This document shows positions 1,970 through 43,035 of a stretch of DNA of 64,000 nt, one piece after another. Below the pieces are notes generated by a model. The model saw only the letters and a program-made list of their open reading frames with translations, did no database searches and was not told the DNA's origin. The DNA is taken from NCBI RefSeq assembly GCF_040938485.1, contig NW_027271095.1, forward strand, positions 124,001-188,000. Direction: 5' to 3'. Origin of the DNA: Diadema antillarum (Eukaryota). A program made the position numbers and the translations under genes. Each line of letters begins with the position of its first letter. The first letter of the stretch is position 1.

Positions 1970-2333
1970 AGGGATGGTATAGTATTGGTTTAGGTGAGGT
2001 ATACTTAGAAACCATTGTACTTTATGAAAACGTAAAGAGAATACAATTCTAAGCCAGGAATCCAGAATTTATTTGAGGAAATTGGTTTTGAAATGCCAGA
2101 GATGTCCAAAAACAAAGTAAAACAAAGTGATCCTAAGAAAAGGTGGGTTCCACCTTTCATCAGGATTGCTTTGTTTTGGATATCTCAGCCATTCTAAAAC
2201 CAAATAAAGCTGTGAATTCCTCTTAGAATTGTATGCTCTTTCATATTTCATAAGAAGTTTCTCATTATCTCAAAAATTCATCAAAAACGTTGGAATCCTA
2301 AAGCCCCGTCTCAACCGAAACATTGCCATCCCT
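1970..2333. mobile_element. Kolobok-like MITE
   Basis: TTAA on both sides (1966-1969, 2334-2337) and termini AGGGATGG…CCATCCCT. The last ~190 bp are similar to the right end of the 11-kb element. Confidence 0.75.
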
Positions 2334-8552: not shown

Positions 8553-9275
8553 ATTGATAGATGAAAATAAACAGACTGCTTTGGAAGCTCCACTTTGAAA
8601 AACGGATAGATCATGAAACGCATGGAGCGACAAACACATGCATCAAAGTTTTTTTCCAAACCGGTGCACTCGCAAGAACTGACTGTAGAGTTTGAGGAAC
8701 TAGGTGGCGCCTGGCGTGTTTACATAGTTTTTTCTCTTTATCTCTTGCAGCTTACGATGCAGTAGAAGCACGGTAGAGTAGTAGTAGTTACAAGACATTT
8801 TACACGTATGAAAGGACCTCAGTGGGTGACACAACCTTGAATGTATTTGAATTTTGAATAGCGGCGGACCATTGAAAATTTCAACGAATTATGTTTGTTG
8901 TTGGGCAGAGTACAAAATCACACAATAACATGCAGATATCAAAGAGGAGCAATTGTTCGCTGATATAATATGGTTGAGCGCATACGGGTCGACAGGAGAG
9001 GCGTCCATTTTACTCTCTTTACACCCCCCCCCCCCTAAAAAAAAAAAAAAAAAGTTTGTATCATTGCCGTAGTGACAGTGGTGAACCATTGGTAAAAGAT
9101 TATAATGAATTATGACGAGATATTTTCCAGGCACTAGCACGTGAACCCTTTGTGTGTTTTGAGCCCCGATTGTTCCAGAAAACCCCATAGCGTTGTGCAC
9201 ACTGTCCAAAGTCCATGGCAGGGAAAGGGTTATAACTAGCATAAAAGCGTTGTGTGATATCTTAAACATCAACCG

Positions 9276-9309
<34 letters not shown>

Positions 9310-11876
9310 TATAACATATGTGTGTGTGTGTGTGTGCGTGTATGCGTGATGTGTTTGGGTTTTTTTTCTAGAGAAGATACTGCTAAATTTACCACGTCAC
9401 TCAGCTCAGATTACGATGTTTCGACGTTGTTTTAAATGTTTACATTTTCTTTTAGACTGTTAAAGGGATGGTCCTGTTCCTGTTTATGTGGCGTATCAGA
9501 ATGTTATTTGCTAGTATTTGCAGAATACTCGATGAAATTGTGTTGAGGAAGGATAGTATCAACATCCACGATGGTTCGTTTCACATTACAGGGTAAAATA
9601 GATGAGAAAATTACGAATTTAGTACATAGTAATTTGCTGCAAGAAGGCAAAATCTTTCAAACATCTATCAGGATGACCGTTACATACAGAGCGCCACCTG
9701 CCGTTTCCATTGCAATACGATACTGTCTCTGCGTTTTGCGAGCCAAACTCCAGCCACCTTCCACGCCTTCCATTCCTCCAAGCGACAGGCCCTCCTGACC
9801 CCTTGACCGAAACACATCTATTTTTAGGCTTTCCTATCACTCTGCGAGCTCCCCAAGGACTCTCGGCAGAATCTCTCTCCCCTTCTCCCAACTCTCGCCG
9901 TACAGACCTACACACACCAGAGAAACACACCCAATACCCAATGATGCCCAGCCACTTGCTTCATTTGGTGTACGGTGGAACACACACCGGTATCGTAACC
10001 CCATTGAACGTGTTGGGTCGCCGATACCAGTATCCCTACCTACCTGGTTATGGAAATGATCCGAATGTCTAGTAATGTACAGCTCCATCCATTGAATACT
10101 ATGTATCCAAGGTTGTGCCATTGGGTACTAAACTTTGTGAGTCCGAAGAAAGTAATTGAATGGTTATGGCACCGACTGTAGATATTTCACGTATGTCTGT
10201 ACTTGAGCCCACCGGCATCAACGATTTTATCATCTATTCGAACATGAAAGTTTGAAGCTAGACACACGTGTACTAGCTACTACACACACACAGAAAAAAA
10301 GATCCTAGATGGATTTCGATTGAATTTTTGATGTTCAAACCGCCAGCTCAGAGATATGTTTATGACTGTCTTGACACAGGCTTGATCAGCGCATGTGAGG
10401 CACTATTGAATAATCGCGACTAGCCACCCTCACAATTCCCAAAAGTAGGAAAAAAACTCTATCGGTAACTTCCGATTTTGTGTGTGTGTGTGTGTGTGTG
10501 TCAAGACATTACAGAAAGTATCCAAACAGATAGACGACGCCAATATTTGAAACGCTACACCTATATTGCAGTCTGCAGCTTCACACACATGAAACGAAAG
10601 AAGTTTGCATCAAGATTTCAACCTCCAAATGAGCCAAAATACATTAGTATAAACTATAAGCACTACATTTTTATAGAAATTAATTGTGAAGTTACAGCCC
10701 CCCCCCCCCCCAAAAAAAAAAAAAAAAAAAAAAAAAATTGCTGGGGTGAAATTCAGGCAATCTATCGTCCGGTCATTTATTATCATTTTTTAATCAAAAT
10801 TTACCGCATACAGTCACTTCCCGTTACAACTGCCGAAAAAAAGCTAACGAGCAGAGATTTGTTTACGTGAATGATCCATATTACGGGCAGGTATCACGGA
10901 GTACTTCCTTGGTATCACAACGTTTTGTACGTGAAGTATTTATAGAATATAATAGAGACAATACTTGGTTTCTTATCATCAAACGATGATAATAGATTTA
11001 GTGTTAATTTACTGTTACGGAACTATTGTGGCAAAGTCTGTATTATCAATCGCATCATGAATAATATGACTTACCTGCTTGACAAATGGTTCATTCTGCT
11101 TTATTCTGCTTAGCGCGTGTAAACAAAATAAGTAAACACGTACCGAACGCGATGTGATGAATAATTTGAATCAAAAATATTTTAATCAGAATTATTTTAA
11201 GTAAGACCCCCTGGCAGTGACTTGATTACATATCTATGTTGTATTATACTTCATGGAAACTTCTAGTTAGAATGCTATATATAATATCAATTGTCAGGTT
11301 TTTGTCAGCGATGGGATCGTATGTTTTGTTCAGTATAATTATAGTGGCCGAAATTTCACTGATTTCACTGTGCATAGCATGCAAACTGACTTGCCCATGT
11401 TTAGTGGATCGAGCTACAATAGAGTTCCGATGTATACCTATAATGCAAGTGAATTCGACAGGATCATGCTGGAACATTCAACTCCCTAGCAGTTATCATG
11501 ATGTACATCTCTCAAGCACCCCACAGTGAAATTCGACTGCGAAACTCGAAATATATTGACAGAATGGAGTCATGGTTCATATTACACAAAGCTTACTGAG
11601 CGTTTGTTATAAACAACGTATACATTGGAGGCGATGTGATGATCCATAAAAGTTTCGGTACGGAGAAATCAACAATGTTTTAATCAAAAATTTTTAGTAA
11701 GACACCCTGAAAGACATTTTATATGCTTCTATATTTAGGTTTACATTATTCTATATGGAAATGTCGTGTTACAATTTCAAATCAATGACAGCTTTTTATA
11801 CCTATATACTCACGTATAAATATGAAACAAGGTGTCTTGGCTCATCTGCAGGTTGAAATCTTGGCTGTACATGGAA

Positions 11877-12177
11877 GGGTGCTGTTCGTTATTCCGAAGG
11901 TTCTTTATTCCGAAGGTTCGTTATTCCGAAGGTTCCTTAATGCGAAACACACAAATTCCCTATACCTAGATGTTGGTTAATCTGAAAATGAAAAAGGGTT
12001 CGTTAATCCGAACATTTTTGTAGCGTTATTCAGAAGGTTCGCTATCGAAGATTTTGTTAATCCGAAAATGAAATTCGGAATAACGAACCTTCGGAATAAC
12101 GAAACTTCGGACTGAAGAGCCTTCGGAATAACGAGCCTTCGGAATAACGACCCTTCGGAATAACGAGCTGTAACCGT
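11877..12177. mobile_element. MITE with inverted arrays of TTCGGAATAACGA subterminal repeats
   Basis: The left side has (ttcgttattccgaagg)n and the right side has (ccttcggaataacga)n. A degenerate relative lies near 19330-19480. Ends are approximate. Confidence 0.7.
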
Positions 12178-12403
12178 ATGGAAGACGATGCCGTCAAGCA
12201 AAAACTCTTGTCAATCTATCTCCACAAGCAAAATCTATAACATGCAGTGACCATCATATCACAAACAGTGTTTGACAGTGTTCATACAGAGATGTGTGTA
12301 CATGTGTATTTATTGTAAATTTTGAACACCGCTTGTATTCGCGTGTCTTTTCCCATTCTTCAGAATAGAACTGGAAATTTGAGTAATTTCGAGACAGTTT
12401 TAC

Positions 12404-12455
<52 letters not shown>

Positions 12456-12650
12456 ATGTGTGTGTGTGTGTGACGGAAGGAAAACTTGCAGTATAGACGT
12501 TGCAGTGATGTTCAGTCTTGCCTTTATTCCCCAAGCTTTCGGCTGTTTCACCAGCCTTTTTCAAGGGCTTGATGAGACATAAACATAAAAGCAAAATAGC
12601 AACCAATTTGCATGCATTTGAACAGAAATAGAAATAGTAATAACAAGAGG

Positions 12651-12702
<52 letters not shown>

Positions 12703-12750
12703 TGTAATAAGAAAATTGGTTTGCTCGGCATCTTGATGATAATAAGTACA

Positions 12751-12966
12751 AGAATTAGTAGAAGAAGAACGCCGTAAAAAAAAAAAAAATCATAGATCCT
12801 GAAGATCTTAAAAACGGAGCATAGCTCTCAAATACTGAAAGGCAAGGTCACACTCTTGAACTGATGAAGAGTGTGACCTTGCCTTTCAGTATTTGAGAGC
12901 TATGCTCCGTTTTTAAGATCTTCAAGATCTATGATTTATTTTTTACGGCGTTCTTCTTCTAATTCT
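12751..12966. repeat. Near-perfect ~100-bp-arm palindrome (9-nt loop) between (TA)n arrays
   Basis: Arms agaagaagaacgccgt…ggtcacactctt and aagagtgtgacc…acggcgttcttcttct, with loop gaactgatg at 12858-12866. Confidence 0.9.
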
Positions 12967-12969
12967 TTT

Positions 12970-13022
<53 letters not shown>

Positions 13023-13805
13023 GTATATATAACAAATACTTGTATACATGTACCTATGTAAACCACAACACATATTTTTTTTTCAATCACAATTCTGACA
13101 GTGCTAAACAATGTATCTTGTTTGATGTGAAAAGGTAAGTAGCATAAGAAACAAGCCTTATAATAAATAATGATAAATCTGTTGATCTTAACATTGGAAT
13201 ATTTAAAAAAAATGCGTGTATTATGGTAAATAATTTTCACATAGTATAAAAATACAACGATAGGCCTACAGACTGCAGCAATTCTCTTTAAATTAAATAG
13301 CAAGACTCTTTTGGGCTATTTTGGAGGGGAAAACTATAAAGTATCAACATGGAGACAATTCGCAAACCATAATACAGATGAGACATTTTATGTGAACTAT
13401 AGATACATGCATCATTTTATAGAAATTGTATACATCACATCCAACTCATTTCGGGCATATACAGATACATAGATGTAAAAGACAGTGTACCAAAATTTTG
13501 TGTAGGAATAAGATGTCAATTTATTCCTGAAAATCCGGAGATCAGGAGGTCGTAGGTTTGAATTCTTTTCGATTATGTACATCCATGATTTATTTTGTCA
13601 AAGATACTTCAAAAACACTGATCAGATTTCTAATGCTTATAAACGTCGATGTATAAAAGGCAATTTTTCAATCGGATGCACCAAGACGAGGGATGAAACT
13701 GTGCGGCAGCACACCTCCCCGACCATGGATTACATTCAAATCTTTTCCGACAATTCTGATGTAAAAACTGAAACAAAACAACACGGTAAGCCTGAAACTA
13801 AGGTC

Positions 13806-13845
<40 letters not shown>

Positions 13846-16800
13846 AGAGAGAGAGAGAGGGAGGGAGAGAGAGGGAGGAGATATCTTTCCGTTCACAGTT
13901 CCTTGCTGAAACATGAGGTCGACAAAGCTGTGAACTTGACGAACGAAACAAGGTTGATCTTGTCAAGGATTACAAACTCGGTTCTAGTTTAGTTCAGTCT
14001 AGTTTTATTCACCATCATTCAAGTACAATGAAGTGCAATAAAAAGACACTAAAAATAATTGAATTACAATATAAATAAATTAGAACAAAACAAGAAGAGT
14101 TGATCTTGAAGGTGAACCCTATACATACATATTTTCATATGCTTTATATTCCCTGGAAGAGCATTTCAGTTGTGGTTAATCAAGTTCCCTCGATTGTTTA
14201 CAGTTAGTTTCTCGTCAGTGTATAAAGTTTATCTTGCAAGTGCTCTGGATCGGCATCTCGCTTTAAAATTATCCCTCTTGAAGCTAACCGAGCTAACCAG
14301 TATCCACGATTACTGCACATTATGACCTCGGACAGAACCGGAGATGGTGATATCGGACCGTACATACCAACATTTCAAGGGAAATGTAAGTACAATTACA
14401 AGACGAAGTGTCGATCACTTTTGAAAATGAATATTTCTGTGATTATTCTTATCAACTCGTATAACAGCTAATGAGGCCAATGTGGTTGCGTGAAGTAATT
14501 AATGCACTTAACTTTTTTTTTCATCAATCACAATCACGCAGTTCGTGGTATTAAAAAAAAATTCGAGGTTATTGCTAAACAAAACAGCTAACTCCTGGAA
14601 TTGGTATTGCCGCTTGAAATTGTTGCCTTTGTTGTTACCGTTTTTTATACCATTGTAATGATTATCATGAATACTGTACTATTATCATCATCACAAATGA
14701 TTTCATTCTCTATATAAGTTGTCATTACAAACCTCCCGAGAACCTCTGTTTTGATTGAGGAGAAAATATGTTTTGTCAAGATTATTTTGACGATGCTCAT
14801 AACGCCAGAGTACGTGGAATCCGTTCCAGTTAGTGCTAATGCTATCGACAATAATTATCTGATATCATTTGGCTCCCAGCCATTAGCCTCTTCACGATTC
14901 GCGAGATATAGGCATATAGCACACATACAAAAACAAAAAACACCAATGACCAATGACCAGTAACAGGAACAACAACGATGGCGAGACATAATACTAATAA
15001 TGTGAATATTATACAAAAATGAATTACACTGATAATACTGAGCAGTAACATGTGAATTATCATTATCTTCGGTTTGACAGTGTTCTTCCCAGTCGTATTC
15101 AATATATATCACCTATATAATAATTCCACGTCAAGCATATCGCTGTGCTTGAAAGCGCAAATTTAAACTTCTCTCTGCCATTATTTTAAAGAGGTGCGAA
15201 CATTGCCTGTTTGTTAATAGCAAAATTTACCTACTTACCGATGTAATAGATTATCTATACGAAACTTACGGTCAAGCCACATATTTGCAAAGAAAATTCA
15301 TACAGGGATAATTCACAGGGATAATATGAGAAAAGGAAGAGAAAAAATATACCTTCGACATAAAAAAGGAAATGTCTGAAAATCAAGCTTATCCGAGGTA
15401 CTAAAAAGGACAGATTACGAACATCTTGTGGGAATTTACCAGCAGGCCTGTACAGCGTATTGCACTACCAAAGAAATTAACCAGCATACATGTAAACATG
15501 TGTGTATACAATGTGTGAACTAATGATTGATCGTTGAGTCAATGTTTTTACTGTTTGAACGTCACTGTACAGTGTAAATTAGGCCCTACGTCCATGTGAC
15601 GGGGGATGGGCATTCAGGGTAATATCTTTGGAGTGACTGTTGCGTAATGTATACTGAGTATAATATTATTATTTTGTATCGTAATTTGTTGTTTTGTTGA
15701 ATATGACAACGGCAATAATAAACAAACATACAGCCTATATAAACATGAAAAATAAGTGAAAACGCGCTGGCATTCATTACTCATCTATACACGCCTATAG
15801 GGGGATTCACACGTATAAAAATTACTGGGTAACAAAACGAGAAATTTGTAACCCGCTAGTAAACTGAGTTCTTTGCACGAGTTGACAAAAACCCAACAAA
15901 GCGCGGTCAGCAGCGCAATGCTAAACCCAAGAAATCTTGCTGTTATTAGCGCGCTAATCTTTGTCCCGCAAATACACTACACACGTGTGAACGGTCGACC
16001 ACAAAAACTCGAATCTTTCATATCCCATCATTCATAGCGCACGCCACAACGGCGTGCACTCGACAATGTATGTGAGGTTCAAGAACAATGCTTGTAGTTT
16101 TATCGATTTATCGATAGGCAATTAGCGAGTTACTAGTATTTCTGTGAGGGAGAAAGGCTACAAAATAAAAACAGACAAATAAAGAAACAGACAAAAAGCC
16201 CAACAAACTCTAGTTTCCGAGCGCATAGTATACTCTACTAGCCAATTAATTTGGAGAGTGTCGATTAACGGTTTCAACAAAAACAAAGAAAACAAATAAA
16301 ACAAAACAAAATAAAAACTCGAGTTTCGGGGAGCTTGGTAACCCGCTATATGGTACATACAAACGCGGCTACTACACTCGTGGACCTTATACGTACAATT
16401 TCCTTCATAATACCCTATCAGTACAATGAAACAACCCGGATCGTTCGCATTCATGATCATGCATGTCTTGATATTGTGTTTACTATCTTTCCAGTATGTA
16501 GAATATCTACGCGCAATTAGCCGGAGCCACACGTATAACAACATAGCGGGATGACGACCCAGGATGACGATTGAACTCCAAATCTCGAGATTTTTCCCCC
16601 TCTTCACGCGTTTGCATGTACCGACAATATTTACGCAGCTGCCACACAGTAGTGTGATGTTGTCATTTACCCATTATTGTGATGCTCGCTTGAATGATGG
16701 AATATAAAATCTGGAGATGAGTAAAGTATTTTCGGTCAGCCGTTTACGCGGTCACCGGGAGCAAATCAGCGCACTATTGCAGAAATCAAGTGCAAGATTT

Positions 16801-19800
16801 GTTGGGGGTACCGTCGCGATGCTGATCGCGCAAATTAGTGGGATTTTGTGTGCACATTTGCAAAAATCTCGAGATTACGATGGTCATGTAAATCTCGAGA
16901 TTTGTATCCCGCTTTTTGGCATACGCGCGAACCCTAATAGTGGCTCTTGTGTTTGTGGGGATGTAGTTGTGTGCAAAACTTAGAACAATGTACAGTACAC
17001 TGTATTTAAAAAAAAAAAAAAAAAATTACGGCCTAATAGTACACCATGATATAGTCTACTGCCGATTCCACAGCAGAGTAGATTACCAAAGGAACTGTTC
17101 ATACAGTTTGAACAACCACCGTGGATACTCGCTATGATGCCATCAACGTCGTTCCCCAATGATCAACTCTTTAGACAGGTGGGCAGTGGTAGCAGCGGGC
17201 CAGATGGAATGACAGGCCTCGGGCTGGGCATGGTTTTCGCCAGGAACGTTCAGGCTGTGAAGGGGCTCAGCCGAACTTCGGAGAGGTGGAGGAAGAAACT
17301 TTTCAGGAGAAAGACAGATGGATAAAGCGACTTGTCTCTGGCGATACTTCGTGGCCGGGAATAGAAAATCGGCATGTCCGAACCTCTCCAATTTTTTTAG
17401 TGCTTTTGGTTTTGGTTTTGTTATTCTGTTGAACACATCTGCCTGTGTAATAAAGAACAAAACAGAAACATTTTCATATATAATTTTATCATTACCATGG
17501 TTCCATGAGTAGACATTTTCTTCAACTAATATACGATTCAATTGCACATCCTGTAGTTTATGTACCAGAGTAAAATGATATTCACACAATGCCTTCCATT
17601 CTGACTAATAAGAAATTCGCGGAATAAAAATAAGCGTCATATAGGCCGATATAGGCCTTACGTGTTTTCACATTCTACAAAAAAACACAAAACAAAATAA
17701 AACAAAAACACAAATACACATGCACACACACACACACACACACCCAATGCGAAAAAGAACAGGTCACGTTTGTTGATATATTTATTAGAATAACATTACC
17801 TTTGTTGACCGGCTTCCAATGCGCATTCCTGTCTTTTCTCGATTTGCTCCTGAGATCTATAAAAAAAATTGATACAGTGGAATTAGAGATTCATTCTTTT
17901 TTCACGCGTAAACGTATATTGAAAGAGTAACGTCGGGTCATACAACGTATCTCATTGACTACCATGATTCATCGTAATATCCCGCGTTCCCTGTTAATGG
18001 AATCAATTGAGTTTTCACAAGTTAATTCCGAGACAAACTTGAGTTTTATAAATTATTCATTTATTTTTGGTGTCCTGTTCGGATCGCTTACAAAAACGTT
18101 CAATTCGAATTTTGATGACCCGAAAAAAGAAATGTATCGTGGCCTACCAATGAAAGGAAACATTTTTTTCGACACAGTTCTCCGATGGAACCGTCAAAAT
18201 ATAAACTGTTTAGAAGTTAGGTGGTCTGATTTCATTTTCAGAGGTCCCGAGAAACCACTAAAGTGCCACTTGAGATGTAGAGTATCCATAGCCTACTGAA
18301 AGTGTAAAAGGAAAAGACATTGGTTGCATTCATAACCGACAATCTATGAAAAATTATATACGCATTGTTCCCAGGATGAATCCCTTTTGAGAAAAAAAAA
18401 ATACATCTGAAGATTTTTTTTTTTCTCAGAAGGGATTCATCCGGGGAACATAATCATAGCATCCTAAAAAGTTTTAGAACCTGACATCAAGCTGTTCTCA
18501 CTGACTGTGATAACAAATTATGAAATGGAAATGGAATTATGCAACCTGCAAATCATCTTATAGCTTGTCAAATTACAAAATCTATTTCATATTTCCATTT
18601 ATCATAACTTTCATATTCATTCAGTACTTCAAAGAAAAGGGCACATCAAAGCAAACAGCAATTCATCATGATGGATCTATGTACAACATGTACGATCTAC
18701 ATAGATGGACAAAACTGACACAGTGAATGAACAACCTACAGTCTTCTACGGCATATACATGTAGAGTCTCAGTCAATTTAATAATAACAAACAGTAATTG
18801 AAGAGCTTTGAAAACAAAAGCAAACAAATCAAAATACAAATCAAAATACATATAAGACTTTAATTAAAAAAGTATATAGGATACTACGCAGAGAAAATTG
18901 AATGAAAATGATACGTAAACACTCGCACATTATCATGATGCATCGGACCACTGAACCTCCGCCAAACGGCCAGCGTTAGTCGTTATGTTGCAGGTATTGT
19001 ATACTTCATTTTTATGATTATGATATGACAGATTAATTACATCATACGGATGAGCTATGTAATATGATGAAGAAACGGTTATTATAAATAGGGGCTACTC
19101 AAAGGTAGGGAAAAGAAAATGACACGACGAGGGTGCAATGCTGCCGCGCCATTGTGTTCCCCTGTTTCTGATACTACCTAGTAGTATACAGTGTAGATCA
19201 TCCCCTTCCAAATCTCATGTAAACTATACTCGACAGAAATTATGATCACCCCTTCCCCCATTCTCTTCGGGCACATATTATTCACTTTTAGAATTAATAA
19301 CGAATATTCCTTCATTTTTGACTAACGAATCTCCTTTTTGGAATAACGAGCCTTATTTCGTTTTCGGATCGATACACATAATCTTGAGAATACTATGGAC
19401 GCTTCAGAATAAGGAAATTTATTTCATTTTCAGATCAACGAACACTCGGCACTAAGGGACCCTACTTCATTCTCGTTTGGCCGATTACCCCTTGCGAATT
19501 TCATTATTCAGAAATCTATTTTTCTGAACTTTTTACACGCATAAAACCTTGAAAATCAAGGTGAAAAAATAAAGTAATCAAGTCTTTTGTGGGTCATCCT
19601 ACATACATCTTTTCTAGCAGGCACAGGATATTCTTCACGAGATAAACTTCAAGCTCTCACATCATGCACTTACGGATAAAGATGGGTCGGACTGACTAAC
19701 TTCTACACTAAATGCCTGTATACTCACTTTTTCACTCAGGACATCACATCGCGAGCTGGGGTCGGTAGATCCAGGTGTCGCGTCGGTTCATTTCTACGGG

Positions 19801-20727
19801 ATGAAGGCATCTTGTCCAGTTTCAATAATCGCGATCCCTTCGTTGTCCCCTACGCCTCATTTCGAAAGATTCTATATTCTTTTGCGAGATTTCTGGGTCG
19901 GAGACGTATGTACACCTCGTCTCGCAAAACCTAACTGTTTTAGTTGCTCTCGAGTCGGAATCCGTAGAGCTCTATACGCAGCATCACACCGAGGAAAAGA
20001 AACTACGTGCCCTCAAGTAAACAAACGGAACGACGCGACGGCTGATAGCGCAGTGCGATCACAGAACTCCACGCACACACGACGTGCATACAGGTCTGCA
20101 AATGTGCCATGAACCCCCATGATTACGCAATATTCCCTCGCCGCGCCGTCTCTCTCCCAAATTCACGGAGGTGAAAAGGTCAACCTCCCAGACCAAGCCG
20201 TGCGGTACACATCGCTCGCGTGTGCGGAAGATAACGGTTGAAAAAGCCCCAAGCCCAATGTAGTCAAATTCAAACGGTAGAGGGAGGTAAGGTCGTATCA
20301 CGGGGGAAAGTGTGGGTCCCACACTTTTATCGGACGACGTATTTTTGCATTTCTCAGCCATTTCTAGACCAATTTTTGTCAAACAAACTTTGAATTCCCC
20401 ATAAATTTCAATGCTCTTTCATATTTCATAAGTAGTTTCTCATTATCTTGCCAAAAAATTTCATCCCGACGTGCCATCATCAACCAAAACAGGACCTTCC
20501 CTTTAAGGTGGCAGGGTGATTTCACGAAAGTTATAAAATGCTAAATAGTTAAAGGTCGGATGTTCTCGAGTCTGTCCACGTTTGAGGACGATATTATGAC
20601 CACCACCGTTGCCCTGAATAATTCAACAAAGGTATTATAGCATAAAGCATGAGATGATTTCATAAGTTTTCATTTCATGAAGTACCATCGTGAATAGAGT
20701 GCGGTCAGGGCGTGCAATGTATATGTA

Positions 20728-21709
20728 AAGTGCACTCCCGTTATAACGACTCGGTTATAACGGCCCTGACACTTGGAATTCCCTTCCCACCGAAATTAAA
20801 AACATGACCACTATGTATTCATTTAAGAAGGCTTTAAGCAGCATTCCCCAGGATAACATTTTGATTTCTTTATTGTTCTGTATTATAATCAAATGTATAT
20901 AAACATGTACGTGACACATGATGCATGTATGTGTGCATACTTATATCGATCTATTTATCTATCCATGGTTATAAATATGGGTATGTATGTGTATGTATAG
21001 GATAGGTACATAATTATGTATATTATGTATATGAGCACGCATATGTGTATGTATACCTCATGTGCCTACTGTGCTGTGCACATTGAACCATGCACGATGT
21101 AATTTGTTATTTCATGTCAGATAACCTCGCGTAGAATGCTTTGTATTCATTCATTACTATTTTCATTATAGTGCATATTCGGTCACTACTACGGCAAAGG
21201 CAACTGAACGTTTTAACTTTAATGGCAGACTCATTTATTATCATTATTATTATTGTAAAGTAGTTGGAGTGGTACACATATACTCTGTAATTTTCCCTTT
21301 TCCCCCTACTCTTCCCTCTCTCTCTCTATCCCTTATTCTATCCAGAGTAGCTAAGTACTAGGGTCTCCATACCGTCAAGCCTCGGCTTATTTTGGAGACC
21401 CTTCTGTTTAAGTTCCCTAAGCTGTTTGTATTTGTTTTGCTTTGTTTTGTTTTGTACCAAAAACTATTTGTCGATATACTGCTTGTCATAAATGACTTGT
21501 ACACAATCATACCTGATGTAACGGAATTAAGCAGAAATAAATCAAATAAAATGAAATAAACGTAATTCCGGTTACAACGAAGTAAAAATTCATGCTGCAA
21601 CATTATCCGCTGTATGTATTTTATTGTTTATTTGTTCGGTTATAACGAAATTTCGATATAATGACAGAAACTGCCAGTCCCGAGGACTTCTTATAACGGA
21701 AGTCCACTG
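20728..21709. mobile_element. Tigger/pogo-like MITE interrupted by a LINE 3' end (copy B side)
   Basis: Termini (a/c)AGTGCACTCCCGTTATAACG…CGGAAGTCCACTG with TA flanks. An intact 186-bp copy is at 32909-33094. Confidence 0.75.
20763..21562 (+). mobile_element. 5'-truncated L2/Crack/CR1-group LINE 3' end
   Basis: 20774 onward encodes WNSLPTEIKNMTTMYSFKKALS, the typical C-terminal ORF2 motif WNxLP…SFK. It is followed by a 3' UTR ending in AATAAA-type repeats. It is absent from the duplicate copy, and aacg is duplicated at the junctions. Confidence 0.75.
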
Positions 21710-23550
21710 TACATAGACTATTTTCTTGAGACCTCCCGGAGGAAAATTGCTTGAAATATACTTATTATTATTATTTACTTATTATTACATCTATTAACCG
21801 ATTAGACATGTTGTGAACTTGACCTTGTCGACAGAATCCCCTATATAACTTCAGTGTCTGGTCTCTGTATTATTGGCGACTACTGAAGTAACGCCGGATT
21901 CAACTTATTAGCCTAAGAAATAAAAATGTAGAACAGCAACAATTTATAAGTAAGATTTTAATTTGAGTTAATGTACAAAGATTTGAAATACTGTCATGTG
22001 AATTATATACTCAGTCCTTTGTGATTTTGTTTATCGAGTAAATTTGACAAAGGGCCCAGCATACTGTATAAATGCAAGCGTTGAACCAAAATTCAGTGAA
22101 TGATAAAAAAACAAATACCCAGCAACATAATTATATACGGAGGCTTTTGAAAAAAAATACACTTGTACCACCATATACGCTAAAGGAGCTGAGATATGCG
22201 TAAACTGCATAACCAATAGTCTGTGATGAGTGGAAGAGATCTTAAGTGACCACGTGTAATGGGAACTAATGGTTGGCTTGTCTCTTACAAAAGGTTTTTG
22301 AATATCATGCCTGAGGTTTGAATTTACGTTCCTTGTATATAGGTTGAATCGTTGAGCTACAGTGATTAACTCTGGTAGATGTTTTGAACACCATGCAAAC
22401 GAGCCTTTTTAAAACGGGGACATTATACCACGGCCCCGTTTTATCAAAAGAATACCACACAGGCTGCTATAGATTTATCATAGAAATCAACTATATCAAT
22501 AATCAATTATAACTCTTCATAAAACAGGGCCCTCTGGAATAAACTTCACAAATTGTACTGAAAGGTCAAAAATCATTAGAAGAAAGTGCTTGGAATAATA
22601 TAGCACACACAGTGTCATTTCATTCAGATCGAAATCATGAAATTTAAGATACAAGATAATGTCAAATCTAGATTGGGATAGATCTGTCTCAGAGTTAATG
22701 CTATTTTTTCTTATCCATCCATTTATAAGTGGTGAAAATAAAGGATTAGGGTTATATCAAAAAAAAAAAAAAAGAATCACTGAATAAGATGGCTTGAATA
22801 TTTAAGACAAGGGTAAAAAATCTGTCACGTCGTATGTTCTTGTCATGTACATGTATATGGTCAGCAAAGGCATCCTATTGCTTTTCTTTCTGTTTCTCTA
22901 TACTTCATGTACTGATCGCAAAATGGTAACAGGCAAGGCGTCCAATGAATGCTTTTTATACGCATCCTGAACACTGATCATTGGTCACATTCATGATTTA
23001 CTGTAATTGTAACACGATGCTTGTACTATTTTCCTGTGTGTTCAGTGTTATTGCGTCAAAGTAAACTACGCATGACAGAGAAAGTAAACGTATAATCCGA
23101 TACATGTACTAAGAATCCTGCGTTGACACTTGATCCAACGGTCCTGTTTTGACGGCTACATCCAAAGGTCGACCCCACCTCCCTGATCAGACAATATACC
23201 TGAAAATACTCAAGGTAAAAACACATCGACACCAAAATTCATCCAAAAGAAAGTAAAGGTGTTTTATCAAGTTGTCTATTTGTCTATGACCTGGTGTGAA
23301 TTTCATATATTTACGTGTGTGAGAGTTGTAACGATGTAGATAAAATCAATGTGACATACTGAACGTATCACACACATAAATATTTAGCTAAAATGGAATA
23401 TTGCATTGTAATGACATGCAATCATGTTTGAAATTAACCAATAAACAGATTTCTTGAAAGTTAATTTACAGGAATGTGATGCTGTAATCCAGTGGGAAAC
23501 AAATTGATCGGACAATACAACTTCAATACATACATATATACATAATACAC

Positions 23551-23598
<48 letters not shown>

Positions 23599-24109
23599 CA
23601 ACATTAAAACATTTAGATATTGAACTCAAGGGAAATAATCAGATTCATGAGACAACTTTGTGCAATCAAAGTCTTTATATTAGGATTTCAGAATTCAGTG
23701 GGTGCTTTCGGAACGCATATTGATACAGAGTACTATGGTACTTTGTGTCATGTGAAAACATGTGACATAAGAATCATTTTCATAGAATAACCTCGCATCT
23801 GATCTTTTATGGAAGCTACCAGGAAATACTGTCTTTTAAATCATGAAGACTTTCTATGGATTTTTTTTTTTACATGATTTAAGTACTTTTGAATCCTTTA
23901 TATAAATCTTTTAAAAATATGAACTTGAAAACGTTTCTAGATGACGATATCCTTGCACTTGCTAAAAGGAGCAACATATTACACGCCGGAGTATAGCTTT
24001 TTTGTGGTGATGGCTATGATTCACTTAACATGCTGCTCTGCTTAACTTCTCAAGGCGGAAGGCTGTAATTCATCGAAATACTGTCTTGAAAAAAAAAAGT
24101 GTAAAATCC

Positions 24110-25079
24110 CATCAAGTGCGGAAATTTCGAATGAATATCAACACAATAATAATTCGATTGGCATGTCATTTTCACTTCAATGTCGGAGACAACCCCGCCC
24201 CCCCCCCCCCAAAAAAAAGGGGGGGGGGGGGTAAAAGAAATGAAATGTTGCTATTGCGACTGGTTTTTGCTCGTTATATCGCACAATTTCCCAATATCTC
24301 TACTGTACATTTTGCCAATGTGAAAAAGACAGTTTTACATGATTGGCAAATAACCATAATCTGGCAAAACACATAAGTTTTCATTGCAAGACTTAGAGTC
24401 ATTTTCAAATTACAGCTTACAGAAAATTTTCACTTGTCCTTTGACCCCATGGCTTAGATCTTTCCCTATCAGAATCATTGTGCAGTAGTGAGTGGATATC
24501 AAGTTTCAGTCATTTCCAAGGAATGAAGAAAATGCTACTAGTAATTGGTGTATCACTACTAAACGGTGTAATTAAATTAAATTTCATAAATTACTTAGTA
24601 CCTTTGACCTTTAACCAATGACCAAAAACTTACAAGAGAAAATTACTTTATGGCAATGCATGTATAATAATTCTATGTATACTTAATTTTATGTTAAGCC
24701 TTAAGACATCGAGGAAAAGGTGATATTTTCGCATTTTCACTTGACCTTTGACTTTTGACCCTATGGTTCAAAACTTTCCCTATAGAGAATTTTCATCTGG
24801 TCATACATACGTATACATTAAGTTTCATGAAAATACTTTCTGGTATGCCGAAATAAGAGTGAAATAGCGAAATTTTAAAATTTAATGTTGACCTTAAGAC
24901 CTTTTACCTTCAACACGTGCACCCAGTAGTTCATCATGCACAACTCCGTCCACTTATACATTCAAAATTATGTCAAGTTTCAGTTGGATAACTCAAACGG
25001 TTCTGAATTACGTCGTCTACAAAATAAATTAAGGACGGAGAGGGACAACCCTAAAATATATCGTGGCGGAGATATAAAA
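24110..25079. mobile_element. TGACCTTTGACC-rich non-autonomous element (DINE/HINE-like) next to the GST B stop codon
   Basis: Repeated tgacctttgacc/ttgaccttga motifs and an end of …ggacggagagggacaacc…tggcggagatataaaa. A paralogous copy is at about 35100-36032. The class is inferred and the left end is approximate. Confidence 0.5.
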
Positions 25080-25141
25080 CAAATATCCCACACATGAATG
25101 GGACAAATGATGTGTCACATTCGGACTCAGCGTCGAAGGAA

Positions 25142-25502
25142 CTACTTCTTGTTCTTAGCGATGTACTCGTCTCTCCATTTGTAGATATCAGCGGAGAGCT
25201 CGTCGAACGCTGGGTTCAATGCGTCTCGAACCCGCTCCATGTAGGCCTTGAGAGTGTCGTTGCTATCGGTGACCGGATCTCGAGAGATGGTGCTTTGTAC
25301 CAGCTACATGGTCATATGTGCGGTGTTCAAATTGAGAGAAAATGAGAGAATAAGAGGACATACTATACCAACAAGCTGTCCGCGTTCTTGCTTGGACAGA
25401 ATTCTTTGACTCCATAAGTATAGGTTTATCTACTCAAGTCCTTCTCGAATCTTATCAGAGCAAAAAGACTGAAACCATTTCATATACGTAATTATCTATC
25501 TA

Positions 25503-25545
<43 letters not shown>

Positions 25546-28500
25546 CATTCTTTAGTATGTGTGTTGTTGTTTTTTTTTTCCCTCCTCCTCCTTCTTCTTC
25601 TTGCAGGCTGTCTTGGCAAGCCAAATATTCTTTACAAATGCAACGTCTCCAAAATCTTATTACACCATAATATGATTTAGTGGTCCTGCGTTCCTTCTTA
25701 CTCTAATTCTGACCCTAATATATATCTTGTTTCTTCTGGTATCCCTAAACACATTAACAATTTTGCCCATTTGTCTCACACGTTGATTGAAGCAGTTGTT
25801 TTGTTACATTCAAATGTGATTTCATTAGTCATTTATGTATTTATTCGTTTCTGCCACATTCTTATTAAACTGTATGAAATGTTGACGATGAACTTTGACC
25901 TTACCTCATTAACAGCCAAAGCGTCAGCAAAGCTGACTTCCTCTCCGAGGAGGAATGGCTTCTTTCCCAGCCATGTCTTGGCGAAGATATCCAACTTTCC
26001 CTTAGTGTGCTCGTGGTATTTCTTGACCGCTTCCTCATCAATGGGCTTGTTCAGCATAAATGGGTACCACACCTGCAAGTATACCAAAAGAAAATGGAAA
26101 TCACATTGCACAATAACGATTTATCACATCGAAGTATTAATGTTAGCTTGTAAGACGGTACCACTGCTCGATCACCTCATGAGTCATACAAGGTCACCTT
26201 CAGATAGACACCGTGAGAGTCTAGGTAAATTTTTGATAAGTAAGAATGACGGAAGTTGCTTTTTCGCAAGGATAAGAAATTACATCTTTCGACTCCATTT
26301 CGAGGTAAGAAAAAAAAAGTATACGTCTATTCGATTTCACTCGTATTTCGTATATTGTTTATGTTTTAAAGTTACCTGTGCCCAGTTGCGATGGTCTTGT
26401 ATAATGAATATTCAAAATCTAACGCGGGATTTAGAAATATCGCAGATGGTAACCTAACGAAACTAGAACAATTTTTCATTCATATTGGTCCTCAAATTAT
26501 ACAAAATCATTTCATTATAACATGAGATGTTTTAAAGTCGACATTCGGCATCAGACAAAAGGGTCACATTTGATAAATGAAATTTCATGAAAAATTTAAC
26601 TCCCCCGATTGAACTATTTTGTGTGTCTGCATTTGTTTTTGCATGTCATTGTATAATCATTCATTTCCTTTCAGACAAGTAAAAAGTAGTTATACCTCGT
26701 CATTATTTTTTTATGTTCTTATTTGAGAATTAACGGTGAGATAGTCTCTGTTGTGGTTCAGAGGAGCTTTTTCGGTTCAGTTTGAAAGATCATCGGACTC
26801 GACCATTGTGTCCCAGACATGAATCCGTTGGCTGTTATATAAGTGGCAATATAGTCACCTCAAATATCATTGCCCATCAGAGATATCACTGAGCAGTCGG
26901 TCTTTTGCTTGGATGCGTAATAAATATGACCATTTCATAGCTTTCTCGATGGACGAAATTCAAAATTCTAACCCGCATTTTCGGTCCCGCACCACGCAAT
27001 ATGAGTGCGAGCACACAAACCATTGGCACAGTCCTCTCGCCACCCGCGACCACTAACCTCTTCATAGGCAAGCTCTTCGAGAGGTTGTCTGATGCCCTGG
27101 TGGTGGAAGGCCATGTACTGGTCCACCTTCGCGCGTTTTTCGATGTCCGCTGGGTACCAGTTGTCCGGGTAATCATTGGGGTACTTCATCGCCAAGTACC
27201 GTAGTATGGCAACACTGTTAAATTTGGAATATGCATGTGACCGTGTCAGCATCGGTGGGTGATACATTCAAACTTTCTTCCTCCTGTTATGTGATATTAA
27301 TTGCATGGTTAATGGAACGGTCTGAGGCAATGAAAGCTAATATCGGCTGCATCGGACTTCGAGAGCACGGGGGTCAAATATGTATTTAACGGATTCATTG
27401 CTTTTATTGCACTTTGAGAAATCATCGTTTTGCAATGAGAAAGTATAAGTTGGAATGACAGTATTTTACTAATGGATCTTACCACTATGAATCATTGAAT
27501 GAATCTGAACATTTGAAAAAGCATATTTGGCTTATCTATTTCATTTGGAAACCGAAGTTAACATAAATCTATATAGTTGCGGTTTTTTAAAGATTTGAAC
27601 TGATCTCACACACCAAAGTATCGCCGTCAATCAAATTTTATAAACCCTTTATAAGTAAAACTCCAATCTGTAATCAATAAAAGAAGAAACTCAAGGGTAT
27701 GGAAATCTCTCTCTTTTTGTAAGAATTTAGCTCGTTCAAAAGTGTCAATTTGTTTCTAAAGTACCTCTCGGATAAACAGAAGTCTCCATCCTTCATTGCA
27801 GGAACCTGCATCATTGGATTGATGGCCTGGAACTCGGGCTTCTTATGCTCGTCTGAGGAGAGAATTATCACATTTTCACACTATTTTCTAAAAAATAAAA
27901 GTAATCGCCAATACAAGAGGAATTTAGTGAAAGTACCAAGAAATAACATCTCTATTTTCAACTAAAACTGTTAAACTCTAAAGTACTGAAAATCTAGAGA
28001 ACTATGTACTATCAGACACACGTTGAGACACATGGCATACAGCAGAGGGGCTCATTTCACGATTAACTTCACAAGGCCCGGGTCACATTATATACACTCA
28101 GCAAAACAAGAAAGTAAACACTTTTTTAACTTCATCTTTCTCATAGATTATTTGGCTAATATTAATGTTTTATATACTATGTTAAAGGTTTTTATAGTTT
28201 AATTGGCTTTCAACCTAGCAGGTCAATAAAAAGGGAAACGTTACGCATGAGTGAACACGTTCATTTTTCTCTTCCAAGGCACAAAAGTAAAAATGGCAAA
28301 AATGGACAAGTTGTTATTCAAGCGCATGTGCTCTTCCATATAACAATGAAACAAAAGACAGATTCAACACAATAAAAATTGCAAATTGATTTATAAAAAT
28401 CAAAGTATGATCCCCATTATGTCTCCGTAACCCTCCAAAGATAAAGAAATACAAAAAATAACGGAGGACAATGAAGAATCTTCCGTCATTTCAATATTCA

Positions 28501-30831
28501 AAAGACATAAGAGAAGAAGCAATGGTAACAAAGATGGTAAAAATTTGAAATGCTATTCCAATTTAAGAAAATTTGAAAATAATATTTGGTTCTTGAATTT
28601 GTCTAATGAATGCTTTAATTTCTTAAAAGAAATAAAGAAATTCTGTCTATTTTATCACCTTTGCGGCTTACTCCCTGTGTCATTTAAACTTTGAGTTGAC
28701 AGAAAATTCCCATGTTTCCCCTTCACTTTCCCCACTATGTTACTATGTTTGAGAGTATAAAGAGAAACAAGAGAACGAACATTTATATCTGCTATTTCAT
28801 TCATGTCTCTCATTGCGCTACATTGGTCTTTTACTATCGTTGTTATCTTGAAGGGCATTTGTATATTAAGTTCATTATGGGAATTTCTGCAATTTATACT
28901 TTTGTGCCTTGGAGGACAAAAACGAATGTGGTCACTCATGCTTACATTTTCCTTTTGTATAAACCTACCAGGTTGATAGCCAATTAAATAACCTTTTATA
29001 TGGTATATGACACAATGATTTTTATGAAGATCTTCTATGAAAATATGAACTGGAAAAAGTGTTTACTTTCTTTTTTTTCTTTTTTTTTTGCTGAGTGTAT
29101 AGCATTATCTCGGCACATCTTCTGATCCTTCGTTGACTGTTGACCGTTTGTTAGGTATTGTCGTGTTTTTATAACAATTACCTTTTTAGAAGGGATTAAT
29201 CTTTTAATCATTAATTTCATGATATTTCATGCATTTGATATACTGTAATGGATTTCAACATTGGTGCATGCCATCATGAGTTTTAATGTGACCATTTCAG
29301 CTAATCTTTGCATAATGGGAATCATGTTTAAAGGGGATGGCTGGCAACTGATCAGTGGGAATCAGTGGGAATGCTGGGGGATGATTGTTCCAGTCCTTGT
29401 GGGATTCATTTAAGTGATTGCACATTACGATCGTTAACGATCGTTAACGATCGCCCCGTCACTGTACAGGCATGCTAACCTGGAAACATTAAACTGCACA
29501 TTACTTGAATATGAGACCATTCTGAAGCAAATAATTTTCACACAACAATACATATATAATGTACTCTTAAATGAATCCCACAAGGATTGGAACAATCATC
29601 CCCCAGCATTCCCACTGATTCCCACTGGTCAGCTACTAGCCATCCCCTTTAAATGAAAGTGCAATCAGGCAAATTATTGTAAGACTAAAATAAAACATTG
29701 GTCGTCTCGTTACTTTCGTATGTTACTGTAATAAGTGAGATTTCATGTCACGACGTAGCCGATTAGCTTGTTATCAAAATTCCTGTTCCCGTGCATACAT
29801 GCATGGCACACAGAAACCAATGCCACCGTATACGAGAATCATGAATTTCTCGGGCATACTGATAATCAAACATGCAGACGACCTTTTCCCTGATGGTAAA
29901 CATTTACAAGTCCATGGTCCCTTGCCGAAAGATAAGGCACACGCTTGAATGAATGACAGCACTACATCAATCATCGAAGATATTCATCTTATCTGTATAC
30001 TGTTTGTCACAGGAAGTCATCATCATATGATAATCTGCAATTCATCGTGTAATGATTGTTCCAGGTCCGTACGCTATAGATGCCAGGAGTGAGATTATCA
30101 TCTGGTTTTTTATTAATGTACATTACAGCTTGGATCAAGGAAATATGGACATGCACTATTCAGGATTAAGCATCAGGCATGTCAATGAGTCAATAAAAAA
30201 AAAGCAAATCTGGTGTTATTAAAATGTGGAGCTGGAATCCTGGAACTCCATACTACACTCTGAAATCCCTACCTGAATCCCATTCACTATACTAAACGCC
30301 GAAATCATAAACGCAAACTTCACTGCGAATATACCCACTGCATAATGTCAGCACAGAGTGACTTTCGAAAGTAAAACTGTGTGAAGCCAAGTGCATACAG
30401 ATGCCATCTTTCCTGTACAAACCACAAGCTATATGCTAGAGGTCTGAGCGGAGTACAGGTGTCCTCAGGTAAGGTCATCCGCATCACGTTTGCATATACA
30501 GCTGTTGGACCTTGCCTCGTCCACTACTCATGGGAAGCAGAGACAATTCCCCCTCCCGAGCCCCTCCCAATTTTGATATAACAATTACAGATGCAAACAA
30601 AAGGTGTAACGGGCTCCTCGCTCTCATATTCTGTGCATAATAATACACAGTAGATCAATTAAACTGCATCGGCGAGCCATTTTTATATGAACAGAAACTA
30701 TGAACAATTTTATACGCACCCTTCAGGAGTTCTACGTGGACGAACTCGTGAGGGATTTTCGAGTTCTTTAGAAAGAGCATGACGGAGCGACAAGGCTGCG
30801 ACAGCACATCGACAAAGACCTTCACCACCAT
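25142..30831 (-). CDS. GSTT1: Glutathione S-transferase theta class, paralog B (228 aa, 5 exons)
   Basis: Exons 30831-30720 (112), 27852-27765 (88), 27214-27058 (157), 26072-25905 (168), 25303-25142 (162). All introns are GT-AG and the frame is open. Motifs: DVLSQPCR, INPMMQVP, WYPADIEKRAKVD, VSFAD. Confidence 0.95.
28095..29097. mobile_element. Tc1/mariner-like non-autonomous element in GST B intron 1
   Basis: TA flanks and TIRs CACTCAGCAAAA…AAGAAAGTAAACACTTTT / AAAAGTGTTTACTTTCTT…TTTTGCTGAGTG. Confidence 0.75.
29332..29648. mobile_element. Kolobok-like MITE with ~83-bp TIRs in GST B intron 1
   Basis: TTAA flanks at 29328-29331 and 29649-29652, with long near-perfect TIRs AGGGGATGGCT…GGGATTCATTTAAG. 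Confidence 0.85.
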
Positions 30832-32300: not shown

Positions 32301-32346
<46 letters not shown>

Positions 32347-32433
32347 TATATTCAACTCTTGCACTTTTCCGGAAAGGAGGAACAGTGAGAGAAACAATGA
32401 TGTCAAAGCTACGCACCGATTTCTCCTTCCTTT

Positions 32434-32589
32434 NNNNNNNNNNNNNNNNNNNNNNNNNNNNNNNNNNNNNNNNNNNNNNNNNNNNNNNNNNNNNNNNNNN
32501 NNNNNNNNNNNNNNNNNNNNNNNNNNNNNNNNNNNNNNNNNNNNNNNNNNNNNNNNNNNNNNNNNNNNNNNNNNNNNNNNNNNNNNNNN
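32434..32589. other. N run (gap or masked tract); others at 1568-1696 and 62181-62311
   Basis: Runs of 156, 129 and 131 N. Two of them are flanked by CT-rich sequence. Confidence 0.95.

Positions 32590-36683: not shown

Positions 36684-36728
<45 letters not shown>

Positions 36729-38293: not shown

Positions 38294-38326
<33 letters not shown>

Positions 38327-42993: not shown

Positions 42994-43035
<42 letters not shown>

What the first reader, a model, noticed from the sequence alone, without database searches (positions are those of the whole stretch)
9464..20502. 11-kb Kolobok-type insertion with its empty site preserved in the duplicate copy
Seen: the segment starts TTAA|AGGGATGGTCCTGTT and ends AACAGGACCTTCCCT|TTAA. 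Removing it gives …agactgTTAAggtggcagggtgatttcacgaaagttataaaatgct. This matches the uninterrupted paralog at about 32683-32728 (…agactgTTAGggtggcagggtgatttcacaaaagttataaaatgct), where the target reads TTAG. Established: Kolobok DNA transposons use TTAA targets, have RR…YY termini, and autonomous copies encode a transposase plus KolX. Inference: an 11,039-bp element with no recognisable transposase inserted into only one copy of the duplication. It carries about 9 kb of host-like cargo (microsatellites, nested MITEs, CpG-rich patches, candidate exons), like a Pack-type cargo transposon. It pushed GST A's upstream region 11 kb away from GST B. Alternative: a short element later swollen by nested insertions.
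Basis: partly seen in the sequence, partly recalled or inferred. Interest (0 to 1): 0.82.

Follow-up and report, generated by a model that had tools for sequence, protein, structure and literature searches.

The report
Long non-coding Kolobok-type transposon copy
The 11-kb segment is a real jumping gene: one copy of a family of 11-13 kb TTAA-targeting (Kolobok-type) DNA transposons of Diadema sea urchins with no recognisable gene of its own. It landed between two tandem GST genes after they duplicated; it is ordinary in kind but unusually long for an element with no transposase.

Summary
TTAA|AGGGATGGTCCTGTT...AACAGGACCTTCCCT|TTAA bounds window 9464-20502. Removing it restores exactly the uninterrupted paralogous site, which reads TTAG at 32689-32692.

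The interior is not locus-specific host cargo, and it is not a MITE swollen by nested insertions. The same interior with the same termini occurs at seven or more other loci in the Diadema antillarum assembly GCA_040938485.1, and in marine metagenome contigs. Three copies are complete (12,762, 12,767 and 13,069 bp). Every junction seen is TTAA, and all flanks differ.

Complete copies differ by 0.5-1.8% in substitutions. The two GST units differ by 8.3% (K2P 0.088), so the insertion is much younger than the duplication. The window copy is a derivative lacking about 1.7-2 kb.

The TTAA target, AG...CT ends and AGGRR terminal motif fit Kolobok/T2-type elements, not piggyBac. No transposase, THAP, KolX or host domain was found. 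NCBI's only gene model inside the D. antillarum copies is a 132-144 aa orphan with no sign of selection.

Best reading: a non-autonomous Kolobok-type element moved in trans. This is a new member of a known kind. The scan had already noted large Kolobok elements elsewhere in this genome.

The parts
9460..9463 (.). Left target-site duplication TTAA
   Evidence: The paralog holds a single TTAG at 32689-32692.
9464..20502 (+). The transposon copy, 11,039 bp, a shortened member of a 12.8-13.1 kb family
   Evidence: The same sequence lies between TTAA pairs at other loci.
9464..9503 (+). 5' terminal inverted repeat: 15 nt near-perfect (AGGGATGGTCCTGTT), imperfect to about 40 nt. Beyond about 45 nt there is no significant similarity to the 3' end.
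   Evidence: The first 25 nt are identical in L002, L008, L011 and L012, differ at one base in L004 and at two in L005.
20488..20502 (-). 3' terminal inverted repeat (AGGGAAGGTCCTGTT on the minus strand)
   Evidence: Identical in L003 and L007-L012.
20223..20502 (+). 3' arm homologous to positions 105-364 of the 364-bp MITE at 1970-2333 (about 70% identity)
   Evidence: alignment score 174 against a shuffle maximum of 50.
20503..20506 (.). Right target-site duplication TTAA
32689..32692 (.). Paralogous empty site (TTAG) in tandem unit B
10807..11275 (+). A single copy of a repeat that is present twice (91% alike) in long-form copies. The window lacks the roughly 1.7-2 kb that lies between the two copies, at about position 11234.
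   Evidence: The long-form joint 11796>10858 (31 nt between) appears in all four runs.
11877..12175 (.). Nested very-high-copy MITE with 16-bp GTTCGTTATTCCGAAG sub-repeats in inverted arms. It is shared by the copies at other sites, so it is older than their spread.
   Evidence: In one search, depth is about 600-3000 times that of the rest, with loose ends at 11877 and 12175. Searches show it in the other copies.
12757..12960 (.). Near-perfect palindrome (core arms 12780-12857 and 12867-12944, 97% complementary) flanked by (TA)n tracts
17146..19810 (-). Region matching NCBI's three-exon orphan gene model of D. antillarum (exons at 19739-19810, 17788-17856 and 17146-17448). Probably not a real coding gene.
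1970..2333 (+). Related 364-bp hairpin MITE with TTAA duplications (1966-1969, 2334-2337) and AGGGATGG...CCATCCCT ends

Best explanation
Window 9464-20502 is one copy of a low-to-moderate-copy family of long (11-13 kb) DNA transposons of Diadema sea urchins. No protein is recognisable in it. The family has the structural hallmarks of the Kolobok superfamily, T2/AGGRR type.

Inferred mechanism: a Kolobok DDD/E transposase encoded elsewhere binds the AGGGAWGGTCCTGTT ends. It cuts the whole unit out and pastes it into a TTAA, which is duplicated on both sides.

This copy entered the spacer between two tandem theta-class GST genes after the tandem duplication, about 0.9 kb upstream of the start codon of the GST at 6.4-8.6 kb. 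It is a shortened derivative, lacking about 1.7-2 kb between two internal direct repeats.

Shown here: the insertion, the family, the TTAA specificity, and that it is recent relative to the duplication. Inferred: the superfamily of the transposase, mobilisation in trans, and any effect on the GST.
For: 1. Exact empty site in the paralog, TTAA on both sides and a 14/15 inverted repeat.

2. The same interior and termini occur elsewhere. An interior ORF led to 'uncharacterized protein [Diadema antillarum]' models on 8 contigs of GCA_040938485.1. That assembly is D. antillarum with both haplotypes retained (PMC13511894).

3. Loci L002 and L007-L012 hold the interior at 92-97% BLAST identity for all but short blocks, with substitution divergence of 1.5-1.8%.

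4. L008, L011 and L012 are complete copies (12,767, 12,762 and 13,069 bp) with TTAA on both sides.

5. Seven different 5' flanks and eight different 3' flanks were seen, including metagenome contigs L003-L005. All 15 junctions are TTAA.

6. L008 and L011 differ by only 0.47% although they lie at different sites. The GST units differ by 8.3% (K2P 0.088).

7. In one run labelled as the other organism, a contig starts exactly at the TTAA (9460). In a run of the window's organism, a contig starts at 9468, just inside position 9467, where the AGGG and AGGA variants differ. This is what several copies with different flanks would produce.

8. TTAA target, 5'-RR...YY-3' ends and a terminal AGGRR motif are the published Kolobok and T2-MITE hallmarks. 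Full-length Xenopus Koloboks are 6.8-13.9 kb (PMC6004289; PMC9587614).

9. There are no Pfam domains in 222 open-frame pieces of 30 aa or more from the window copy. There are none in the ten longest open-frame pieces (53 aa or more) of the extra 2 kb of a long copy.

10. The only gene model called inside the D. antillarum copies is the orphan.
Against: - No transposase was tied to these ends, so the superfamily call rests on target site and termini alone.
- I do not know whether Pfam has a model of the Kolobok catalytic domain. Earlier notes of this scan (untested here) say Kolobok genes in this genome are intron-rich. A hidden or decayed transposase is therefore not excluded.
- A 12.8-kb family with copies 0.5% apart would more usually be autonomous.
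- The window's two junctions were not bridged by independent reads.
- Whether the GST-site insertion is fixed, polymorphic or shared with other species is unknown.
- Copy number in the window's own species is not calibrated.
Confidence: 0.85

Rival explanations
1. The family is autonomous. An intron-rich or unusual transposase gene is hidden in the 11-13 kb interior and was missed by the domain search.
For: The length equals that of full-length Xenopus Koloboks, which do carry a coding sequence. Copies are young. Earlier notes of this scan report large intron-rich Koloboks in this genome (untested here).
Against: No domain was found in any open frame of 30 aa or more. The longest open frame is 171 aa. 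NCBI's annotation of seven D. antillarum copies calls only a 132-144 aa orphan. That ORF has an 8-nt frameshift in five copies and variable sites of 3, 8 and 2 at codon positions 1, 2 and 3.
Confidence: 0.06
2. It is a Pack-type or macrotransposon cargo carrier: host DNA captured between two MITE-like ends.
For: The interior is non-repetitive apart from a few nested repeats. The 3' 280 bp are MITE-like. An ancient capture of non-coding host DNA cannot be excluded.
Against: There is no host gene fragment or domain. The interior is the same at all eight loci recovered (this one plus seven in D. antillarum), so nothing was captured at this locus. There are no inner termini or inner TTAA, as a composite of two complete MITEs would have.
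Confidence: 0.04
3. It is a non-autonomous member of the piggyBac superfamily, or of another TTAA-targeting group, rather than Kolobok.
For: TTAA duplication at all 15 junctions.
Against: The ends read AGG...CCT, not CCC...GGG. PMC9587614 states that the RR/YY ends are what separates Kolobok from piggyBac.
Confidence: 0.04
4. The element was present before the tandem duplication and was later excised precisely from unit B. The TTAG would then be a repaired site.
For: The paralogous site is TTAG rather than TTAA.
Against: Family copies differ by 1.8% or less, against 8.3% between the GST units, so the copy is far younger than the duplication. One change in four bases is expected at this divergence.
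Confidence: 0.01

Closest known systems
Xenopus Kolobok elements (XKol) and their T2-MITE derivatives (PMC6004289)
   Same: TTAA target duplication, AG ends with an AGGRR terminal motif, full lengths of 6.8-13.9 kb, and short MITE relatives that share the ends.
   Different: XKol full-length copies carry a transposase coding sequence of about 2.3 kb. None is recognisable here. This family is in a sea urchin, and the sequences are unrelated.
Kol0-type Kolobok (transposase plus KolX; Kapitonov and Jurka, as summarised in PMC9587614)
   Same: TTAA duplications and 5'-RR...YY-3' termini.
   Different: Neither a transposase nor a KolX (P2X7-ballast-like) protein was found in the interior.
KolobokP (PMC9587614), also reported in echinoderms
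   Same: Same superfamily hallmarks in part, and presence in echinoids.
   Different: KolobokP has long terminal direct repeats and 3-5 bp duplications. Here the two ends show no direct-repeat similarity, and the duplication is always TTAA.
piggyBac
   Same: Strict TTAA target, and an empty paralogous site of the same length.
   Different: piggyBac ends read CCC...GGG. These read AGG...CCT.
Pack-MULE / Pack-type cargo transposons
   Same: A long non-autonomous element with short recognisable ends.
   Different: Pack elements carry host gene fragments with parental copies elsewhere. No host fragment was detected here.

Membership tests
Kolobok superfamily | 4-bp TTAA target-site duplication | tested here: met
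   TTAA at both window junctions and at all 13 further junctions in L002-L005 and L007-L012.
Kolobok superfamily | Termini 5'-RR...YY-3' (T2 type: AGGRR) | tested here: met
   The element starts AGGGA (AGGAA in L004 and L005) and ends ...CCCT. The definition is taken from PMC9587614 and PMC6004289.
Kolobok superfamily | Mobilised by, or encoding, a Kolobok-clade DDD/E transposase | not testable with these tools
   No transposase is in the element. No curated Kolobok protein was available to search with, and no autonomous partner with matching ends could be looked for in the genome.
Kolobok Kol0 group | Second gene KolX (P2X7 ballast-like) | tested here: not met
   No P2X7-type or cysteine-rich domain hit in any open frame of 30 aa or more.
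piggyBac superfamily | TTAA target with CCC...GGG termini | tested here: not met
   The target is met, but the termini are AGG...CCT.
Pack-type cargo transposon | Interior made of captured host gene fragments | tested here: not met
   No Pfam domain. phmmer of the second-longest open frame, the one that matches NCBI's orphan gene model, against 1.84 billion proteins found only the family's own copies. The interior is identical in organisation at other sites.
MITE | Short (under about 800 bp) non-autonomous element | tested here: not met
   The length is 11,039 bp here and 12.8-13.1 kb elsewhere. A true MITE relative lies at 1970-2333.
Composite / macrotransposon of two complete elements | Inner termini with their own TTAA at both ends | tested here: not met
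   There is no inner TTAAAGGR or YCCTTTAA between 9464 and 20499.

The most novel reading that the evidence does not exclude
A wholly non-coding 12.8-kb element is being moved efficiently in trans and is still active. Two D. antillarum copies at different sites differ by only 0.47%, and the window insertion may be a presence/absence polymorphism. This would show that a Kolobok transposase naturally carries 13 kb or more. It would also raise the question of what keeps so long an interior intact, for example cis-acting sequences needed for transposition or a non-coding transcript.
Probability: 0.4. Interest if true: 0.5.

Novelty: new member of a known kind. Interest (0 to 1): 0.4.

Why it matters
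It turns a guess from raw sequence into a documented transposon family: complete copies, a strict TTAA target and a dated insertion with its empty site preserved in a paralog.

For transposon biology, the notable point is the length of an apparently gene-less element that has nevertheless spread recently. That bears on how much DNA a Kolobok transposase can move.

For annotation, the repeated 'uncharacterized protein' models of D. antillarum (XP_071511613.1 and relatives) are most likely pieces of this transposon rather than genes.

For the GST cluster, the insertion replaces everything beyond about 0.9 kb upstream of one theta-class GST. It could therefore have changed that gene's regulation; this was not tested.

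Tried and rejected
- Single-copy reading of the read lay-out. I first took the even depth of the interior as 'single copy in two species' and inferred that the insertion predates their split. The D. antillarum loci showed that this depth is the family's copy number, not a calibrated single-copy level. I withdrew both inferences.
- Long subterminal inverted repeats. Beyond about 45 nt the 5' end has no significant similarity to the 3' end or to the MITE. No shared subterminal motif stands out.
- RNA genes as cargo. No tRNA was found, and nothing reached an Rfam gathering score; only generic hairpins appeared.
- A third paralogous copy of the target site, to decide between TTAA and TTAG. None is in the window.
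- UDPGT or other genes linking the L002 locus to the window. None was found.
- Junction-spanning ORFs looked up by exact sequence. Not on record.
- A flank ORF searched for relatives, to reach an orthologous empty site. No hit.
- Exact scans of JGI metagenome contigs with both termini. No match.
- ESM Atlas search of the orphan protein. No usable hit.
- Extension of L002 beyond window position 19841. Not possible. That copy is interrupted there by unrelated repeat-rich DNA.

Full report
**1. The observation**

The window reads ...agactg TTAA AGGGATGGTCCTGTT... at 9460-9478, and ...AACAGGACCTTCCCT TTAA ggtggcagggtg... at 20488-20518. The paralog reads ...agactg TTAG ggtggcagggtg... with TTAG at 32689-32692.

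Self-BLAST shows a tandem duplication. Unit A is 9365-9462 plus 20503-32351. Unit B is 32590-43042. The units differ by 8.3% in substitutions, K2P 0.088. The two flanks of the 11,039-bp segment abut exactly in unit B.

The terminal inverted repeat is 14 of 15, and imperfect to about 40 nt. A chance origin is excluded, at about 6e-10 for fixed ends. An N run at 32434-32589 hides what lies upstream of the paralogous site, and I left it alone. The TTAG needs no special explanation: at this divergence the chance that one of four bases differs is roughly one in three.

**2. What the ends are**

A 364-bp hairpin MITE at 1970-2333 has TTAA on both sides and AGGGATGG...CCATCCCT ends. The last 280 bp of the big element are homologous to its positions 105-364. 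The 5' end shares only about 45 nt.

Two more TTAA|AGGR elements lie in the window, at 29332-29648 and 47192-48766.

The literature read here defines Kolobok by TTAA duplications and 5'-RR...YY-3' ends, which separate it from piggyBac. It defines the Kolobok-derived T2-MITEs by a terminal AGGRR. Full-length Xenopus Koloboks are 6.8-13.9 kb (PMC9587614; PMC6004289). The element meets the structural criteria.

**3. What the interior is**

- *Open frames.* The longest start-to-stop ORF is 149 aa. The longest stop-to-stop frame is 171 aa.
- *Domains.* None of 222 open-frame pieces of 30 aa or more hits a Pfam domain beyond low-complexity noise. There is no THAP, DDE, reverse transcriptase, P2X7-like or host domain.
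- *RNA genes.* There is no tRNA and no Rfam family at gathering score.
- *Repeats.* The interior holds microsatellites. It holds a very-high-copy nested MITE with 16-bp sub-repeats at 11877-12175. It also holds a palindrome at about 12757-12960.

**4. Read lay-out, and a correction**

Contigs of four public runs were laid on 9200-15199 at 80% likeness. Two runs carry the window's organism label and two carry another organism's label. All four cover the interior evenly, apart from the nested repeats.

I first read this as 'single copy in both species'. That reading was wrong, because the depth was never calibrated against single-copy DNA (see section 5).

Two details do fit a multi-copy family. 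In one run of the other organism, a contig starts exactly at 9460, so the shared sequence ends just outside the TTAA. In one run of the window's organism, a contig starts at 9468, one base inside position 9467, where the AGGG and AGGA end variants differ.

**5. The decisive evidence: other copies**

phmmer of the interior ORF at 17146-17604 (minus strand) against 1.84 billion proteins found only two near-identical proteins. One is on contig JBFRCO010001134.1 of GCA_040938485.1 (locus L002). That assembly is Diadema antillarum, with both haplotypes retained (PMC13511894).

L002 matches window 9460-19841 at about 96% BLAST identity. Its 5' terminus and TTAA are followed by a completely different flank.

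A Tara metagenome scaffold (L003) holds the last 3.9 kb, the 3' terminus, TTAA and another different flank. Two more metagenome contigs (L004, L005) give two further 5' flanks.

The protein cluster has four members on eight D. antillarum contigs, all named 'uncharacterized protein'. Loci L007-L012 each hold the same interior.

Summary of the copies:
- L008, L011 and L012 are complete, at 12,767, 12,762 and 13,069 bp, with TTAA on both sides.
- There are seven distinct 5' flanks and eight distinct 3' flanks.
- All 15 junctions are TTAA.
- At least eight different insertion sites are documented: the window plus seven D. antillarum loci.
- Three D. antillarum copies lie within the range of a gene model, presumably in an intron: a UDP-glycosyltransferase (L002), an aminotransferase (L007) and a glycosyltransferase (L008). 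A fourth (L009) lies next to a doublecortin-domain gene.

**6. Age and structure**

Substitution divergences among the complete copies are as follows:

| Pair | Divergence |
|---|---|
| Window copy vs L008, L011, L012 | 1.5-1.8% |
| L008 vs L011 | 0.47% |
| L012 vs L008, L011 | 1.7% |

The first 510 bp of four copies differ by 1-2%. All of this is far below the 8.3% between the GST units. The insertion therefore came long after the tandem duplication, and excision from unit B is not needed.

The long form has two direct repeats, 91% alike. Both correspond to window 10807-11275. Between them lie partial duplicates of neighbouring sequence and a second, inverted copy of the nested MITE. The window has one repeat and lacks the roughly 1.7-2 kb between them. 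The long-form joint (11796 to 10858 with 31 nt between) is present in all four runs. The window's organism therefore also holds long-form copies.

The nested MITE and the palindrome are in every copy. The element was not swollen at this locus.

**7. Coding capacity**

NCBI's only gene model inside the D. antillarum copies is a three-exon orphan of 132-144 aa. Its exons map to window 19739-19810, 17788-17856 and 17146-17448. Several results argue against a real gene:
- It has no relatives outside the family.
- Five copies carry an 8-nt frameshift.
- One copy (L002) has an in-frame stop just upstream of the modelled exon.
- Variable sites fall 3, 8 and 2 at codon positions 1, 2 and 3.

The ten longest open-frame pieces of the extra 2 kb of the long form have no domain either.

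Caveat: I do not know whether Pfam models the Kolobok catalytic domain. Earlier notes of this scan (untested here) describe intron-rich Kolobok genes in this genome. A hidden transposase keeps a small probability.

**8. Context**

Four theta-class GST paralogs lie on the minus strand. First exons carrying the MVV...SQPCR motif lie at about 8552, 30830, 40905 and 51597.

The insertion point is about 0.9 kb upstream of the start codon of the first GST, and several kb downstream of the GST of unit A. Units A and B differ by several other insertions, so transposon turnover in this array is frequent.

**9. Verdict**

The 'Pack-type host cargo' reading and the 'swollen MITE' alternative are both rejected.

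It is a new member of a known kind. It is notable mainly for the length of an apparently gene-less element that has spread recently.

From its labels and nearest sequences, the window's genome is a diadematid sea urchin close to D. antillarum. Which species it is remains an inference that I did not settle.

Noticed in passing
window 29332-29648: A 317-bp MITE with TTAA on both sides and 17/20 inverted ends (AGGGGATGGCTGG...). It lies inside a 1.9-kb block (28463-30363) that unit A has and unit B lacks (unit B is continuous at 40438/40439).
   Followed up: partly
window 47192-48766: A 1,575-bp element with TTAA on both sides and AGGACAAGTCCA... inverted ends (17/20), next to the 3' part of the fourth GST. 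The ends resemble the Xenopus XKol A3 type (AGGACATGTC...).
   Followed up: no
window 20763-21558; 34015-34322; 37707-38341; 41610-42223: Further insertion/deletion differences between the two GST units. Unit A has a 796-bp insert with an A-rich tail, only 257 bp from the big element. Unit B has a 308-bp insert flanked by TTAA, and two more of 635 and 614 bp.
   Followed up: partly
window 11877-12175: A MITE built of 16-bp GTTCGTTATTCCGAAG repeats in inverted arms, with a possible 7-8 bp duplication (ATGGAAG). Its depth in the read lay-out is hundreds to thousands of times that of its surroundings in both organisms, so it is one of the commonest repeats of these genomes.
   Followed up: partly
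D. antillarum proteins XP_071511613.1, XP_071477591.1, XP_071492158.1, XP_071502832.1, XP_071505847.1, XP_071511786.1, XP_071505555.1: These 'uncharacterized protein' models all lie inside copies of this transposon family, and they carry frameshifts among copies. They look like annotation artefacts of a repeat.
   Followed up: yes
L004 1-41 (Tara metagenome contig): The flank of this copy ends ...GAGTGCCT right at the shared TTAA, which is itself a Kolobok-type end. Two TTAA elements appear to sit back to back on one TTAA.
   Followed up: no
L002 1-9969: In this D. antillarum copy the element is interrupted at the equivalent of window 19841 by more than 10 kb of unrelated DNA. That DNA carries about 275-bp tandem repeats (931-2866) and many TAGGACTTAAA-type palindromic motifs near the junction. 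It is probably another transposon inserted into it.
   Followed up: partly
window 8552, 30830, 40905, 51597 (minus strand): Four theta-class GST paralogs in tandem, all on the minus strand, with microsatellites at the unit boundaries (9274-9354, 32288-32354, 42985-43045). These may have mediated the duplications.
   Followed up: partly
window 31563-31830 and 42251-42532; L003 flank: A repeat starting TTAAAGGCATTA... occurs near the end of both GST units, and at about 76% identity 34 bp from the 3' junction of the Tara copy. It may be another TTAA-element family.
   Followed up: no
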